DNA of 64,000 nt from Mobula birostris (taxonomy: Eukaryota). The DNA is taken from the NCBI RefSeq assembly GCF_030028105.1, contig NC_092374.1, forward strand, positions 90,734,491 through 90,798,490, in the 5' to 3' direction. Shown piece after piece: positions 5,395 through 51,246 of this stretch (position 1 is its first letter; every line of letters begins with the position of its first letter). The notes under the pieces are model-generated. The model did no database searches. It was given only the letters and a program-made list of their open reading frames with translations, and had not been told where the DNA came from. Both the position numbers and the translations under genes were made by a program.

Positions 5395-5784
5395 CTGTGG
5401 CCCTCTCCACGTCTCTTTACCCAGAGTCCCCGCTGACAGTCTCCCAGCTGCCCTCCCTCATCACGGTGATGGAAGGAGAAGACGCCAGGTTGACCTGCAG
5501 CCTCCAGCAAGAGGCCGCCGATGTGAGGAACCTCAGCTTCACCTGGTCCAGCGAGAGCGCTGAGGTGACCTGCCCCATTGTGGTCCCCGGACAGGAGTCG
5601 AATTGGTGCAGCAGTTGGGATGGAAGGCTTTCTGTCATGGCTCACGGCTGGAATAAATCCTCGGTTCTGACCATCAAGGAAGTTTCTGTCGTGGACAACG
5701 GTACCTACAGGTGTGGGGTTACGCTCCTTGATCCCCCCGGGGACAAGACGGTTTATGGAAATGGCTCTGTGCTGTTGGTTCTCG
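5395..5784 (+). CDS. Gene 1 Ig V-domain exon: TMIGD2/CD28H-like, CD28-family receptor
   Basis: Acceptor ATTCCCTCACCCAG|, donor CTCG|GTGAGT, 390 nt, phase 1-1. Peptide VALSTSLYPESPLTVSQLPSLITVMEGEDARLTCSLQQ...FTWSS...EVTCPIVVPGQESNWCSSWDGRLS...DNGTYRCGVTLLDPPGDKTVYGNGSVLLVL has the B- and F-strand Cys, C-strand Trp, DxGxYxC, a J-like GxG motif and an extra Cys pair. Confidence 0.9.
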
Positions 5785-6474
5785 GTGAGTGTTTCTGATA
5801 TTTTACTGATCTAAGTGCTCTCCCCTCCCCCCACCGTTACTCCCTCGTCACTCACTGCTCCTCTCTGTCCAGCCAGTCCCCCCGTTGGGTCCTCAGCCTC
5901 CCTGACAGGTGGAGCTCAAATGCACGTGATGGGTCTTTTTCCATTTGTACATTCATTGCCACAGTCAGAGTCTCACATCAGGGAGTAAGACCATCTGACC
6001 CATCACGTTTTGTGCTGCTCAGCGGGTACCCGTCGTTTTGATCCCATCTTTAGCGCTTGGCCCAGTGCTTTCTGTGCCTGGGTGTCTGTACACCTCTTCA
6101 ACCCTCTAGGTGACCATGAAAAGAAGGAGAGAGAGGGAAATATAAGGAGGGTGAGAGGAGAAGGGGAAGGTGAAAGAAATGGAGGGGGAGGAGGGGGAGA
6201 GAGAGAGAAATAGAGATGGCGAGGAGGAAAGGAGAAGGGAAACTGGAGAGAGTGAGAGAGACCAAGAGAGGCAGAAAGAAATATGGAGAGGGGAAAAGCA
6301 GAGAGAGAGAGAGAGAGAAGGTAAAAGAAGGAAGAAACATAGAGAAGAATAGAAGAGGGAACTAAGAGAGAGGGGGAAATGAGATAGAAGCACTGCAGAG
6401 CAAACTGACATGGAATAATGAACAAGTTGCAAATAAGTGCAGTATAAAATCAACTTCTCCCTCTGAACTCTCAG

Positions 6475-6528
6475 GCGAAGTGGAATCTCCAGGGACCAAT
6501 AAGTCTGAAGATCTTCACCTGCTTCCTG
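6475..6528 (+). CDS. Gene 1 stalk exon (GEVESPGTNKSEDLHLLP)
   Basis: Acceptor CTCTGAACTCTCAG|, donor CCTG|GTAAGT, 54 nt, phase 1-1, open in frame with the V exon, one NKS sequon. Confidence 0.75.
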
Positions 6529-6754
6529 GTAAGTTCATGTAACCTTTCAGGAAGGAGTGAACCAGAACGGATTCCGGGTTATCTGGATGTTGCTGCTAGA
6601 TAACAAGCATTCTGTTTATAAAATCCCTGTACTATCCTAAAGCCCTTCATCACTCCTGATCACTCATAGATCATTGGAGAAGGACCAGGGTCAAATTCAA
6701 GGGTTACTGTCATTCAACGGTACACATGTGTGCAGATAAGTGAAAACAACATGC

Positions 6755-7017
6755 CTCTGTTATTTACTGATAAGCCCTTTCGGCTCCTCAAGCAGTGCCG
6801 CTCAACAATCTCCCAATTTAATCCTACTCTAAACATGGGGCAATGTCCAATGACTATGTAACCTACCAACTGGTAGGCTTTGTACTGTGGGAAGTAACCG
6901 GAGCGCATGGAGGAAACCACGTAGTCACATGGAGAACATACAAACTCCTTACAGGCACTGTTGGGAATTGAACCTGGGTTGCCTGTATTGTAAAATGTTG
7001 TGCTAGCCACTACACTA
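6755..7017 (-). mobile_element. tRNA-derived SINE (HE1-like elasmobranch type)
   Basis: Minus strand shows A-box TAGTGTAGTGG and B-box GGTTCAATTCC, then body GTAAGGAGTTTGTATGTTCTCC. Related pieces at about 22700-23100 and 48549-48970. Confidence 0.7.
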
Positions 7018-7439
7018 CTGAGCAGCCCTGCAGCAAATGTAGGTACAATCAGTTGAAAAATAACACTGGGATAACGGATTAGTTTGGTGGCCTTTCTAAT
7101 CCCACACTACATAAAACCATGAGATATAGGAGCAGAATTAGGCCATTTGGCCCATCGAGTCTGCTACACTATTTCATCATGGCTAATCCATTTTCCCTCT
7201 CAGCCCCAATTTCCTGCCTTCCTCCCATAACTGTTCATGCCCTGACTAATCAAGAGTCTATCAAACTCTGCCCTAAATATAGCCAATGCCCTGGCCTCCA
7301 CAGCCACCTGTGGCAATAATCTGCACGGATTCACCAATCTACATTAGTCCCAGATTAAACCAACTGTTTCTCTCCCTCCCCATTCCCCAGTACAGATCCC
7401 CAACTGATCTGCTCTCTCTCTCTGCCTTCATCCTTAATC

Positions 7440-48332: not shown

Positions 48333-49139
48333 GTAAGGGGCTGGCCGACTTTGCCCATCCTCTCTTGACCACATTTGCCTCTCCAATCCCCCAGGTGCTC
48401 TGGTTCCCTCCACATCCCAACGACATGCAGGGTGGGTGGGTTAATTGCCGCCTAGTGTGTGGACGAGGGGCAGAATCGAGGGGGGGGGATAGAAATGTTG
48501 GGGAGAATGGATTACATGCAATAAAGTTATGTGCTGGTATTAGTTTGAGGGCGGCACGGTAGCTTAGTGCATGGTGGTGCTGGTTGTCCATCGTGTTCGA
48601 CGATGACAGCAAACCTGTGCTGGGGAGTTTTTTAAAGGGGAAAGGCGGTTGCATTGGGGCAGTTCCACTCTCCCGATCTCAGAACTCCAACCAAGAGAAG
48701 GTCTTCCTTGGTTACAGAGGATGACTGTGACGCCTCCCGTGCCTCGTCATGGTCATCCACTCTCCGCAGTGCGTTGCAGTACCGCCTCCCTGGCCGCTGG
48801 ATCTCACTGTGCCTCTCACCCGCCCAGTCTGCCGGGGCTGACTTCACATGCTGGGGCAGGCATGTCCCTACCTCATCGGGGTATAAGGACGCCGGCTACC
48901 CTCACCTGCTTGCCGAAGCAGTGTCATTGCGGTTAGCGTAACGCTATTATAGCGCACGCTGTAAGATCGCCGGACAATTGAGAAAGGTCAGAAGGTTTCT
49001 GCTGTGGAATAAATACACAGTGATGACCCAGTTTGATTTTGTCGTCGCCGATTAAGTAGACCGAATACTCGCACTTGTCCGAGTCCCTGCGCGACCTCCC
49101 ATGTCCGTTCGTCCCTCCCCACTGATCTCCCTCCCTCTT

Positions 49140-49925
49140 GAAAGCGGGACAAGTGCTACACCTGCCACTATATCGCCTCCCTCACTACCACTGAGGGCCC
49201 CAGACCGTCATTCCAGGTGATGTGACACTTCCACTGTGAGTCTGATGGGGTTGTCTACTGTGTCCAGTGCTCCCGGTGTGGCATTTAGTATCTGAGGGAG
49301 GCCCGACGTAGATTGGGAGACCGCTTCGCCAAGCACCTATGTTCCGTCCGCCAGAGAGAGAAAAAAAAGCGGGATCTCCCAGTGGCCACCCATTTAAATT
49401 ATAATTCCTAATCCCATTCCGACATGTCATTCCATGGCCTCCTCTACCACCGCGATGAGGCTCTATTTGGAGGAGCAACACCCTATATGGCATGAACATC
49501 GATTTCTCGAACTTCCAATAATGCTCCCCCTCCTTCACCATTCCCCATTCCTATTTCTCTCTCTCTCACCTCACCTCCTTAACTGCTCAGCACCTCCCTC
49601 TGGAGCTCCCCCTCCTTCCCTTTCTCCCATGGCCTTCGGTCCTCTCCTATCAGATTTCCCCTTCTCCAGCCCTGTATCTCTTTCACCAGTCAACTTCCCA
49701 GCTCTTTCCTTCACCCCCTCCCCCTCTCCAGGGGACCCAGGGGAAGTTGATAGGCAGGTGAGAAGAGATAAGAGGCAAAAGTAGAGGATAGAAGAAGGGG
49801 GGAGGGGTTGAAATTTTTTTAACCAGAAGGAAAAATCAATAATCATGCCATCAGGTTGGAGGCTACACAGACAGAATATAAGGTGTTGCTCCTCCGCCCT
49901 GAGTGTGGCCTCATCGTGGCACAAG
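49140..49925. mobile_element. Two Penelope 3' fragments in tail-to-tail inverted orientation within gene 2 intron 2
   Basis: Plus-strand GIY-YIG remnant 49140-49500 plus tail; minus-strand HLIFCLCSLQPDGMIIDF at about 49740-49925. Confidence 0.7.
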
Positions 49926-50571
49926 TATATATATGTCACCATATACAATGCTGAGTTTCATTTGCTTGTGGGCATACTCAATAAATCCATAATAGAATAA
50001 TAACCATAATAGAATTAATGAAATATCATACCAACTTGGGTGTTATAAGCAGTATATCTCAAGGAAATGAAATGTAGAGTCCTTGAAAGTGAGTCCATTG
50101 GTTGTAGGAATATTTAAATGATGGGGCAAGTGAAGTTGAGTGAAGTTATCTGCTTTGGTTCAAGAGCCTAATGGTTGAGGGGTAATAACTTCCTAAACAA
50201 AGTGGTGTGGGTCTCGAGGCTCTTGTACCTTCTTCCTGATCACAGCAGCAGGAAGAGAGCATTTCCTGGGTGGTGGGGATCTCTGATGATGGATGCTGCT
50301 TTCCCGCAACAACATTTGGTGTAGATGTGCTCAATAGTGGGAAGGGCTTTACCCACAATGGAATAGCCCGTATCATAAACTACTTTGTAGGATTTTCCAA
50401 TCAAGAATATTGGTGTTTCCATACCAGGTTGTGATGCAGCCAGTCTATCTAAGACCACAAAACCGTAGTAGAGACAATATGCTCTCCACTACACAACTAC
50501 AGAGGTTTGTCAAAGCTTAATCTCTTTTGTTCCTAATTCACTCTGCTTCTGTTCTGTTTCTCTGTCAACAG

Positions 50572-50651
50572 CTGGGCATTCCCAATCCTATGGACTTTCC
50601 TCTGTCTGGATGTCAGTGCTACTCCTGGCATGGAGCAGGTTTTCATTTTGA
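50572..50651 (+). CDS. Gene 2 exon 3: GPI-signal-like C-terminus AGHSQSYGLSSVWMSVLLLAWSRFSF*
   Basis: Long pyrimidine tract ending TCTGTCAACAG|, phase 1, in frame, TGA at 50649-50651. Total CDS 489 nt = 162 aa. Confidence 0.75.
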
Positions 50652-51232
50652 AATGCGGCCCCTAGGGAACTGGGAGAGGTTGCCATCGTGGACTGAATGG
50701 AGGCATTTTGCAAGGCAGTCACCCCATCTGCATCTGGTTTCAGGAGACTGCAGAACTTCTACACTGTCCAGACACATCCTAGGTTCCAAGTGGAAGTCTC
50801 GCTGCACAGAACTCCTCCCTCCACTTTATCTCTGGATGACTCTGGATGGAGAGTTTTGCACAGAGCAGTGGCGTCTAACTGGTTTTTAATTCCACTCACA
50901 GACTCTTGTATTTATATGGGAGCAGTGCCGGCTTAAGCATCAGAAGGGGCTGCTTTTCAAGTTCGAGCTGCACTTGGACGCCACTCTCTTTAACCACTCA
51001 GTGCGGATAAGGGAGAGGAGAATCAGTCAGAAGAACCCCCTTGTGGGTCTGCCACTGGGCCTGGCCAGGATGGATATTCCCGAGTCCAAGCCGGGGTCTA
51101 TTGAGGACTCTGTCTGAGCCAACTACCTGCCCCTCTTCCTAGTTGCTGTGTCTGTTTGGATCCAGTAGGCACCTCAGTAGCTGGGGTGCACACTGGACAA
51201 TGGGACTTGTATTTTATCCTAATCATATAACT

Positions 51233-51246
51233 AATAAATAAATAAA
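51233..51246 (+). terminator. Three overlapping AATAAA polyadenylation signals for gene 2
   Basis: AATAAATAAATAAA about 580 nt after the stop codon. Confidence 0.65.

What the first reader, a model, noticed from the sequence alone, without database searches (positions are those of the whole stretch)
5395..51246. Linked CD28-family-like receptor gene and B7-family-like ligand gene: candidate cis-encoded costimulatory pair
Seen: two co-oriented single-V IgSF genes about 38 kb apart with no other recognisable host gene between them. Known: TMIGD2/CD28H binds HHLA2, CD28/CTLA4 bind CD80/86, and in mammals these receptors are not adjacent to their B7 ligands. An ancestral linkage of B7 and V-type receptor genes in MHC-paralogous regions has been proposed. 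Inference: gene 1 (TMIGD2/CD28-like) and gene 2 (B7-H4/HHLA2-like, GPI-type) could be an undescribed cognate receptor-ligand cassette of cartilaginous fish.
Basis: partly seen in the sequence, partly recalled or inferred. Interest (0 to 1): 0.8.

Follow-up and report, generated by a model that had tools for sequence, protein, structure and literature searches.

The report
Manta three-V receptor beside B7-like gene
Two real, expressed immune-type genes lie side by side in the giant manta ray and in a skate, but the first is the tail end of a three-domain receptor from an unstudied shark-and-ray family, not a single-domain CD28-type receptor, and nothing yet shows that the two proteins bind each other.

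Summary
Both V-set exons are real, spliced and transcribed on the + strand of a Mobula birostris chromosome.

**Gene 2** is as described: a 162-aa protein with leader, one B7-like V domain and a short hydrophobic GPI-type tail. NCBI calls it "PD-L1-like". Its best solved-structure relatives are CD276, PD-L1 and VTCN1.

**Gene 1** is not a single-V gene. The window holds only the third V exon, a stalk exon and the TM/tail exons of a 496-aa leader-V1-V2-V3-TM protein (NCBI "IGSF3-like"). V1 and V2 lie upstream of the window. It belongs to an elasmobranch family of 1- to 4-V receptors for which I found no published description. Its V fold is closest to TCR V-alpha, then TMIGD2, CTLA-4 and PD-1. 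It fails the CD28-family definition: three V domains and no tyrosine motif in the tail.

**Between the genes** I found only transposon ORFs and satellites. The gap (45770-45915) lies upstream of gene 2's first, non-coding exon and cuts no coding sequence.

**New here:** in thorny skate the gene 1 orthologue is followed 7.7 kb downstream, on the same strand, by a gene 2-like V exon with candidate leader and GPI-type tail exons. The linkage is therefore conserved across batoids.

Cognate binding is untested (about 15%). The scan noted this receptor family earlier on other DNA of this genome.

The parts
5425..5784 (+). Gene 1, third V-set exon (V3), phase 1-1, with FG/G region YRCGVTLLDPPGDKTVYGNGSVLLV and an extra Cys pair
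   Evidence: Pfam V-set E 6e-12. RNA contig pieces 5423-5783 and joint 5783>6474 GT..AG. Boundaries read. Matches P0133 residues 254-381 at 97.7% in tblastn, the departures lying at the ends of the local alignment.
6475..6528 (+). Gene 1, 54-nt stalk mini-exon (EVESPGTNKSEDLHLLP)
   Evidence: Joints 5783>6474 and 6527>8928, both GT..AG, in X1, X2 and X3. 100% match to P0133 380-397.
8929..9227 (+). Gene 1, transmembrane and cytoplasmic exon. TM is PWFFISLLCTVGVSLTAGLIFSYCI. Read-through isoform X2 stops at 9225-9227. RNA contigs also leave this exon at donors near 9122 and 9132.
   Evidence: 100% match to P0133 397-496. RNA pieces end at 9133 (X1-X3) or 9122 (X4), with unplaced sequence beyond. 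Sequence read.
14025..14085 (+). Gene 1, probable alternative 3' coding exon (LKYTRDSADAGRPEQHTKC, then stop). The donor and frame used in manta are not resolved.
   Evidence: tblastn of the Hemitrygon orthologue's C-terminus: 89% identity over 19 aa, E 6e-9. Acceptor CTTACAG precedes it.
45770..45915 (.). Assembly gap (146 N) in the 5' flank of gene 2. Not filled and not crossed by any coding exon.
   Evidence: Sequence read. The first exon of gene 2 ends at 46412.
45968..46412 (+). Gene 2, non-coding first exon. The 3' end at 46412 is supported. The 5' end is only the projected start of a 1676-nt RNA contig and is uncertain. An ATAAATA motif lies near 46298.
   Evidence: The loose end of X3 record 16 (442 nt before 47135) matches 46380-46409 exactly. 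Sequence read.
47138..47225 (+). Gene 2, exon with ATG at 47162 and the signal peptide MVSRGVIAALSLLLISGCSYC
   Evidence: Joint 47224>47987 GT..AG in X10 and X3. Translation.
47988..48332 (+). Gene 2, single B7-like V-set exon, with an extra Cys in the A strand (GIYCKF) and in the G strand (AEYCTK)
   Evidence: Pfam V-set E 1.7e-9. Joints. PDB matches: CD276 5.7e-13, PD-L1 3e-9, VTCN1 4e-8. Profile search: CD276 1.3e-17, PD-L1 7e-11.
50572..51250 (+). Gene 2, last exon: 26 codons (AGHSQSYGLSSVWMSVLLLAWSRFSF), stop ending at 50651, then 3' UTR with AATAAA/ATTAAA at 51233 and 51241
   Evidence: Joint 48329>50569 GT..AG (cut +3) in X9, X10 and X3, with contigs running to 51135-51369. Translation and poly(A) signals.
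39425..42455 (+). Intergenic filler: LINE with endonuclease and reverse-transcriptase ORFs
   Evidence: Pfam Exo_endo_phos 2e-12 and RVT_1 1.5e-32.
26808..29776 (.). Intergenic filler: 35-bp satellite, about 86 copies
   Evidence: Tandem Repeats Finder.
9359..10901 (.). 52-bp satellite, about 30 copies, between gene 1's TM exon and its candidate 3' exon at 14025
   Evidence: Tandem Repeats Finder.

Best explanation
The interval holds two separate, independently transcribed immune-type IgSF genes of the giant manta ray, adjacent by conserved synteny.

Gene 1. The window start to about 14.1 kb is the 3' part of a type I membrane protein built leader-V1-V2-V3-stalk-TM-short tail (496 aa in isoform X2). 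It is conserved in stingrays, sawfish and skate. It belongs to an elasmobranch family of receptors with one to four tandem ready-joined VJ-type domains. Some shark members of that family carry ITIM/ITSM-like tails. The manta protein has no charged TM residue and no tyrosine in its tail. I infer that it cannot signal by the usual ITIM, ITAM or YxxM routes. It would then act as a binding partner, decoy or adhesion molecule, or signal through an unknown associate. Its membrane-distal V1 lies outside the window and has an invariant CTLA-4-like FG loop (VQLLEPLPIV). I infer that this loop is the main binding face.

Gene 2. This gene encodes a 162-aa protein with a signal peptide, one B7/PD-L1-like V domain with an extra A-G strand cysteine pair, and a short hydrophobic C-terminus. 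I infer that the C-terminus is exchanged for a GPI anchor, so that a lone B7-like V domain sits on the cell surface as a ligand or cis-modulator.

Shown: exon structures, transcription, domain families, orthologues, and conserved adjacency in skate. Inferred: GPI anchoring, the binding face, and any function. Not shown: that the two products bind each other.
For: - Gene structures and splicing come from RNA contigs and translations.
- Gene 2 is identical to NCBI 'programmed cell death 1 ligand 1-like [Mobula birostris]'.
- Gene 1 is 'immunoglobulin superfamily member 3-like isoform X2 [Mobula birostris]', 496 aa. Its V3, stalk and TM parts match the window at 98-100%, the mismatches lying at exon boundaries.
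- Orthologues with the same build occur in Hypanus, Hemitrygon and Pristis. Amblyraja has a two-V version.
- Shark paralogues with 1-4 V domains carry ITIM/ITSM-like motifs.
- Ten consecutive invariant residues sit in the V1 FG loop across five batoids.
- The V3 model (pLDDT 89) matches TCR V-alpha, TMIGD2, CTLA-4, CD7 and PD-1 and TCR V-alpha and shark NAR V in the PDB.
- Gene 2's V domain matches CD276, PD-L1 and VTCN1.
- Skate locus L001 has the gene 1 orthologue at 10001-16593 (+) and a gene 2-like V exon at 24243-24590 (+), 38% identical, E 3e-23. Both extra cysteines are conserved. A leader candidate lies at 23546-23609 and a 29-aa hydrophobic tail exon starts at 25693.
- Both genes are present in the same RNA runs X2 and X3.
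Against: - The first two V exons of gene 1 were not read in this window. The join V2>V3 rests on the NCBI model, on orthologues, and on an RNA contig whose 899 upstream nt have the expected length (778 nt of CDS plus UTR) but were not seen directly.
- GPI anchoring is inferred from sequence only, and the manta tail is only moderately hydrophobic.
- Skate is the only second species in which the neighbourhood could be read.
- The Pristis locus fetched was that of a paralogue and showed no gene 2-like exon within 10 kb.
- The skate gene 2-like gene is not in the gene calls, and its expression is unknown.
- The 3' end of gene 1 in manta (donors at 9122 and 9132, exon at 14025) is not resolved.
Confidence: 0.8

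Rival explanations
1. The two genes are a cognate receptor-ligand cassette. The GPI-anchored B7-like V protein (gene 2) would bind the CTLA-4-like loop face of the neighbouring multi-V protein (gene 1), and linkage would be kept because the two co-evolve, as proposed for NKp30 and B7H6.
For: Same-strand adjacency is conserved between manta and thorny skate. Gene 2's V is B7-like. Gene 1's V domains carry CD28-family-like traits, and TMIGD2 and CTLA-4 rank high by fold. The V1 FG loop is invariant in five batoids. The runs in which each gene's contigs are deepest differ (X1 for gene 1, X9 for gene 2), as would be expected if they sit on different cells. This last point is weak because depths from contigs are poor measures.
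Against: No binding, co-variation or complex model was obtained. Adjacency of IgSF genes is common in IgSF-rich regions and may be mere descent. In Pristis the neighbours are further multi-V paralogues. Neither protein has a signalling motif, so the labels 'receptor' and 'ligand' are arbitrary. Only two species support the linkage.
Confidence: 0.15
2. Gene 1 is a true CD28-family member (TMIGD2/CD28H-like or CD28X-like).
For: The V3 FG/G region reads YxCx6PPGx5GNG, close to the CD28X motif YxCx6PPPx4/5GxG quoted in PMC11599192. There is an extra Cys pair. Foldseek ranks TMIGD2 second and CTLA-4 fifth, sixth and ninth. V1 carries P-L-P followed by GxG/GxA, like the chondrichthyan CD28/CTLA4 relatives.
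Against: All nine family members have one V domain, whereas this protein has three. There is no YxNx, YxxM, EYEDM or ITIM motif in the tail. There is no EIP motif. HMMER relatives are multi-V elasmobranch proteins and then generic Ig proteins. The PDB profile search ranks TCR V-alpha first, with no CD28 or CTLA-4 in the top 60. Neighbours seen are a Gal-3-O-sulfotransferase (skate) and a C1r/C1s-like gene (manta), not the published synteny markers.
Confidence: 0.07
3. Gene 2 is the batoid counterpart (orthologue or analogue) of Thy-1/CD90, a small GPI-anchored single-V glycoprotein, and not a B7-type ligand.
For: The protein-language-model search puts three Thy-1 clusters first (scores 0.96, 0.95, 0.95; lengths 151-161 aa). 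It shares the overall build: about 160 aa, signal, one V, GPI-type tail, an extra disulfide that probably ties the A and G strands, and a non-coding first exon. The comparison with Thy-1's disulfides and exon plan rests on my own knowledge.
Against: By sequence the V domain carries the B7 signature (FRGR...GNASLxIxxxxxxDxGxYxC) and matches CD276, PD-L1 and VTCN1 at E 1e-17 to 3e-9. The feature score may reflect architecture only. No Thy-1 sequence was available from a tool for a direct alignment, so this is untested rather than excluded.
Confidence: 0.1

Closest known systems
CD28 family (CD28, CTLA4, ICOS, CD28H/TMIGD2, CD28HL1-3, CD28X, PD-1) as defined across jawed vertebrates in PMC11599192
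   Same: V domains have a second Cys pair. A proline-containing FG loop is followed by GNG(S/T) in the G strand. TMIGD2, CTLA-4 and PD-1 are among the best fold matches. It is a type I membrane protein.
   Different: It has three tandem V domains instead of one. There is no tyrosine signalling motif and no EIP or MYPPPY motif. The synteny is different. Sequence profiles prefer TCR V-alpha.
B7 family V domains (PD-L1/CD274, B7-H3/CD276, B7-H4/VTCN1)
   Same: Gene 2's V domain matches them best by sequence, over nearly the whole domain. NCBI names the product PD-L1-like.
   Different: It has no IgC domain, no transmembrane segment and no cytoplasmic tail. It has a GPI-signal-like end and an extra A-G strand cysteine pair conserved in skate.
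Thy-1 (CD90)
   Same: Size, a single V domain, a GPI-type C-terminus and an extra disulfide. It is the top hit by language-model features.
   Different: The sequence signature is B7-like. The spacing of the extra cysteines differs from Thy-1 as I recall it (own knowledge, not tested here).
NKp30-B7H6, a VJ-type receptor and a B7 ligand proposed to co-evolve (Flajnik et al. 2012, Immunogenetics 64:571, cited; content from my own knowledge)
   Same: A VJ-type IgSF receptor gene lies next to a B7-like gene in a cartilaginous fish. The idea is that linkage preserves a pair.
   Different: These are different genes: a three-V receptor without a signalling motif and a V-only GPI-type ligand. No binding data exist. 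The location beside a C1r/C1s-like gene is not shown to be the MHC.
NITR (bony fish novel immune-type receptors) and SIRP-type multigene VJ receptors
   Same: They are non-rearranging V domains with a J-like G strand. The family has inhibitory (ITIM) members and members without ITIM, and a variable number of domains.
   Different: The family is seen here only in elasmobranchs. All domains are V-type, up to four in tandem. No sequence-level membership was shown.

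Membership tests
CD28 family (PMC11599192) | [quoted passage not shown] | tested here: not met
   P0133 and its orthologues have V1-V2-V3. The window's V exon aligns to residues 260-380.
CD28 family (PMC11599192) | Conserved FG-loop motif (MYPPPY / P-[P/L]-P + GxG / EIP / PPP..GxG) | tested here: inconclusive
   V3 has LLDPPG....GNGS and V1 has LEPLPI....G.(A/G)T. These resemble the published motifs but do not equal them.
CD28 family (PMC11599192) | Tyrosine-based cytoplasmic signalling motif (YxNx, YxxM, EYEDM, ITIM/ITSM) | tested here: not met
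   There is no Tyr in the cytoplasmic tail of P0133, P0002, P0132, P0135 or P0011.
CD28 family (PMC11599192) | Family-specific conserved synteny (for example fsd1/stap2 for CD28H, or the three-gene CD28/CTLA4/ICOS cluster) | tested here: inconclusive
   Only 10-kb flanks could be seen: Gal-3-O-sulfotransferase upstream in skate and a C1r/C1s-like gene downstream in manta. None of the published markers was seen.
CD28 family (PMC11599192) | V domain groups with family members in similarity searches or trees | tested here: inconclusive
   Foldseek ranks TMIGD2 2nd, CTLA-4 5th and 6th, and PD-1 8th, behind and among TCR and Ig V domains with similar E-values. The HMM profile against PDB gives TCR V-alpha first, PD-1 at 1.3e-8 and no CD28 or CTLA-4 in the top 60. 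No tree with the published sequences could be built.
B7 family | B7-type IgV domain | tested here: met
   CD276 5.7e-13, PD-L1 3e-9 and VTCN1 4e-8. With the manta-skate profile, CD276 1.3e-17 and PD-L1 7e-11 over positions 25-117.
B7 family | Membrane-proximal IgC domain | tested here: not met
   Transcripts join the V exon directly to the 26-codon last exon. No further Ig pattern was found in the window.
B7 family | Transmembrane segment and cytoplasmic tail | tested here: not met
   The C-terminus is a short hydrophobic stretch with no tail. The skate homologue ends in a 20-residue hydrophobic run.
B7 family | Binds a CD28-family or other IgSF counter-receptor | not testable with these tools
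   No complex prediction or binding assay was available.
Thy-1 (CD90) | About 160-aa precursor: signal, one V-like domain, GPI signal | tested here: met
   162 aa with those three parts. Thy-1 clusters are the top feature hits.
Thy-1 (CD90) | Sequence homology to Thy-1 and THY1 synteny | not tested
   No Thy-1 sequence or locus was obtainable from the tools.
Elasmobranch multi-VJ receptor family (unnamed; NCBI 'uncharacterized' / 'IGSF3-like' / 'PTGFRN-like') | Tandem V domains with consensus VSQSP..L.V.EGE..L.C.L....FxW....C......C..DPRV....L..KSS.L.I......D.GTY.C.V.I..P.P....GNGSVVLV | tested here: met
   HMMER E 3.5e-82 to 5.6e-44 for the five best relatives. Alignment A3 of 17 domains from rays and sharks shows invariant Cys25, Cys50 and Cys97 and near-invariant Cys62.
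Linked receptor-ligand pair of the NKp30-B7H6 type | Linkage conserved across species | tested here: met
   In manta (this window) and in thorny skate L001, with the same order and strand. Other species could not be read.
Linked receptor-ligand pair of the NKp30-B7H6 type | Direct binding or co-variation of the two products | not testable with these tools
   None obtained.

The most novel reading that the evidence does not exclude
A batoid-conserved two-gene cassette in which a V-only, GPI-anchored B7/PD-L1-like protein is the cognate partner of the neighbouring three-V protein. That protein's membrane-distal domain carries an invariant CTLA-4-like LEPLPI loop. This would be a costimulatory-type receptor-ligand pair kept in cis for more than 200 million years (divergence time from my own knowledge). 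It would also be a living example of the proposed ancestral linkage of B7 and VJ-type receptor genes.
Probability: 0.15. Interest if true: 0.8.

Novelty: new variant of a known kind. Interest (0 to 1): 0.45.

Why it matters
If the pairing were real, it would give a second testable case, after NKp30-B7H6, of a B7-type ligand held next to its VJ-type receptor in the oldest jawed vertebrates. That bears on how costimulation and antigen-receptor-like V domains arose.

Without the pairing there are still two useful points. First, a B7/PD-L1-like V domain exists as a stand-alone GPI-type protein conserved in rays and skates. Second, the supposed CD28-like gene belongs to an elasmobranch family of multi-V receptors that gene-finders list only as 'uncharacterized' and that the 2024 survey of the CD28 family does not cover. 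As it stands, the finding is a corrected annotation plus one new synteny observation, not a demonstrated system.

Tried and rejected
- **AlphaFold2 on gene 2 without an alignment** gave an unusable model (pLDDT 40). No fold search was possible for gene 2.
- **Word-indexed homologue searches** with either V exon alone found nothing beyond the manta protein itself.
- **phmmer of the 31-residue FG/G segment** of a shark paralogue against the PDB gave no hit. The position-by-position likeness to the CTLA-4 G strand therefore rests on my memory only and is not used as evidence.
- **DNA of other loci.** Look-ups of non-longest isoforms failed.
- **Paralogue loci.** The Pristis locus L002 and whale-shark locus L003 show no gene 2-like exon within 10 kb. 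These are paralogues, so this says little.
- **The 150-aa 'Peptidase_M23 (weak)' gene calls** next to shark and sawfish paralogues match LINE sequence in the window. I take them for transposon-derived calls.
- **UrIg/UrIg2** (PMC12227049) were considered and rejected because they are V-C1-C2-C3.
- **Literature.** The 2012 and 2015 B7H6/NKp30 papers are not held. Searches for a description of the multi-V family or of a V-only GPI B7 in elasmobranchs found none.
- **C1r/C1s-like neighbour.** A search of the remaining window for its CUB or Sushi exons found none. That gene's coding exons lie mostly beyond 64000.

Full report
**Source.** The window comes from a 210-Mb chromosome record of the giant manta ray, Mobula birostris. 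Gene 2's product is letter-for-letter the NCBI protein 'programmed cell death 1 ligand 1-like [Mobula birostris]' (P0001, 162 aa).

**Observation.** Two V-set exons are present, both on the + strand.
- The first is at 5425-5784 and the second at 47988-48332 (Pfam V-set E 6e-12 and 1.7e-9).
- A six-frame pattern scan finds no third complete Ig V pattern in the 64 kb.
- Both exons sit in spliced RNA contigs of public runs with canonical GT..AG joints.
They are real exons of expressed genes, well beyond chance.

**Gene 2.** The RNA contigs define four exons.
- A non-coding first exon ends at 46412. A contig's loose end matches 46380-46409 exactly.
- Exon 47138-47225 carries the ATG at 47162.
- The V exon is 47988-48332.
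- The last exon starts at 50572, with the stop ending at 50651 and poly(A) signals at 51233 and 51241.

The protein has a signal peptide, one V domain and a 26-residue end. After small residues (S-A-G) and a polar spacer comes a short hydrophobic run with no tail. This is the form of a GPI-anchor signal (inference).

By sequence the V domain is B7-like.
- phmmer against all PDB chains gives CD276 at 5.7e-13, PD-L1 at 3e-9, VTCN1 at 4e-8, and then MXRA8, CAR and BTN3A.
- There is no IgC exon, because the V exon is spliced straight to the last exon.
- A protein-language-model search puts Thy-1 clusters first (0.96). This fits the architecture, but I could not test it by alignment.

**Gene 1.** The evidence is against that.
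- The RNA contigs join 5425-5784 to a 54-nt stalk exon (6475-6528) and a TM exon (from 8929).
- The main contig carries 899 further nucleotides upstream that do not lie in 3500-5423.
- An exhaustive HMMER search with the exon found, as best relative, a 491-aa stingray protein in which the exon aligns to residues 290-408, with two more V domains matching before it.
- A search with that protein returned the manta protein itself, 'immunoglobulin superfamily member 3-like isoform X2' (496 aa, same chromosome record).
- Its sequence is leader-V1-V2-V3-stalk-TM-tail. Residues 254-496 map to the window at 98-100% identity, the few mismatches lying at exon boundaries.
- The CDS upstream of the V3 exon is 778 nt, which fits the 899 unplaced nucleotides.
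- Earlier notes of the scan on V exons 6-8 kb before the window, including a 'LEPLPI' loop, describe V1 and V2 of this same protein. LEPLPI is in V1 of P0133.

Isoform X2 reads through to a stop at 9225-9227. RNA contigs also leave the exon near 9122 or 9132. A conserved 3' exon lies at 14025-14085, 89% identical to the Hemitrygon C-terminus. I could not resolve which donor and frame manta uses.

**Family of gene 1.**
- Orthologues with the same build occur in Hypanus, Hemitrygon and Pristis. Amblyraja has a two-V version. All have a Tyr-free tail and an uncharged TM.
- Shark relatives (Heterodontus, Pristiophorus, Cetorhinus, Rhincodon) have one to four V domains, and some have ITIM/ITSM-like motifs.
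- Beyond these, HMMER finds only generic multi-Ig proteins.
- The 17-domain alignment shows a distinctive consensus with four cysteines and an FG/G region P-x-P....GNGSVVLV.
- A profile of it against PDB sequences ranks TCR V-alpha first (2e-10). PD-1 is at 1.3e-8, and no CD28 or CTLA-4 chain is in the top 60.
- A confident AlphaFold model of V3 (pLDDT 89) matches, in Swiss-Prot models, TCR V-alpha (3.8e-9), human TMIGD2 (1.3e-8), CTLA-4, CD7, PD-1 and CD8-beta, all within two orders of magnitude. In the PDB it matches TCR V-alpha and shark NAR V.

The domain is therefore a ready-joined VJ-type V with CD28-family-like traits. The protein nevertheless fails the published definition of the CD28 family, which requires a single V, family motifs and a tyrosine motif (PMC11599192). 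I found no paper on this multi-V family. Earlier follow-ups of this scan reached the same view on other members in this genome.

**Between the genes.** The large ORFs tested give transposon-type Pfam hits: endonuclease and RT at 39425-42455, GIY-YIG at 19091-19795 and zf-RVT at 18207-18755. One further ORF at 21169-21765 (-) hits ALKBH8_N and reads like a LINE RT C-terminus, which is my reading. There are two satellites: 52 bp at 9359-10901 and 35 bp at 26808-29776. Gene calls around gene 2 list nothing else upstream within 10 kb. About 1.9 kb downstream of its stop they list a CUB-EGF-CUB-Sushi-trypsin gene, which is C1r/C1s/MASP-like.

**The gap.** The 146 N at 45770-45915 lie in the 5' flank of gene 2, about 500 nt before the end of its non-coding first exon. 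No coding exon crosses the gap, so there is no frame to check. Continuity itself was not tested with reads.

**Linkage in another species.** The thorny skate locus around the orthologue (L001, gene at 10001-16593, +) contains a V exon 7.7 kb downstream on the same strand, at 24243-24590.
- It is 38% identical to gene 2 (E 3e-23).
- Both extra cysteines and the B7 signature are conserved.
- A leader candidate with a phase-1 donor lies at 23546-23609.
- An exon from 25693 encodes 29 residues ending in a 20-residue hydrophobic run.
- The two-species profile sharpens the B7 match (CD276 1.3e-17, PD-L1 7e-11).

Order, orientation and the V-only GPI-type build are thus conserved between two batoid orders. 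Loci of paralogues in sawfish and whale shark show no such exon within 10 kb.

**Interpretation.** The best-supported reading is two adjacent, separately transcribed IgSF genes held together by conserved synteny.
- One is a signalling-motif-less three-V membrane protein of the elasmobranch multi-VJ family.
- The other is a lone B7-like V domain, probably GPI-anchored.

The run of ten invariant residues in the V1 FG loop across five batoids suggests a conserved binding face, by analogy with CTLA-4/CD28 (inference). That the neighbour is its partner is attractive but untested. I put it at about 15%.

**Verdict.** The novelty is a new variant of known kinds plus a new synteny observation.

Noticed in passing
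window 52548 onward (+), from the gene call: The next called gene downstream of gene 2 encodes a 1337-aa CUB-EGF-CUB-Sushi-trypsin product that looks like two fused C1r/C1s/MASP-type models. I saw no CUB or Sushi exon in 52.3-64 kb, so most of it lies beyond the window.
   Followed up: partly
window 9122-9134 and 14025-14085: Gene 1 has at least three 3' ends. One is read-through to the stop at 9227 (NCBI isoform X2). RNA contigs of organism A leave near 9132, and a contig of organism B leaves at 9122. A conserved downstream exon matches the Hemitrygon C-terminus in a frame that none of these donors obviously feeds.
   Followed up: partly
window 26808-29776: A 35-bp satellite of about 86 copies has a higher-order period of about 1242 bp. 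Identical 224-aa ORFs recur at 27015 and 28257.
   Followed up: no
window 41322-42555 and L001:20890-22120: The LINE reverse-transcriptase ORF in the manta intergenic region is up to 87% identical at the protein level to a copy in the skate intergenic region. This is high for two batoid orders.
   Followed up: no
proteins P0003, P0006, P0013 (Heterodontus, Cetorhinus, Rhincodon): Shark relatives of gene 1 carry tails with ITIM/ITSM-like motifs (for example VLYAVL, TAYAEI, SVYTVV). The batoid orthogroup of gene 1 has none. The family seems to have inhibitory and 'silent' members.
   Followed up: partly
L002:14798-19572 (-) and the Heterodontus locus of P0003: 150-aa gene calls with a weak Peptidase_M23 hit sit beside or inside multi-V genes in sawfish and horn shark. 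By tblastx they match LINE sequence in the manta window and are probably transposon-derived.
   Followed up: partly
L002:1-3061 (-) and 47233-48358 (-): In sawfish the multi-V genes form a cluster. The true orthologue of gene 1 lies head-to-head with a two-V paralogue, and a further 242-aa V-set gene lies 9 kb downstream.
   Followed up: no
window 64-1795 (+): Retroelement integrase-like ORFs and a 68-bp tandem repeat (2683-2984) lie in what must be the long V2-V3 intron of gene 1.
   Followed up: no
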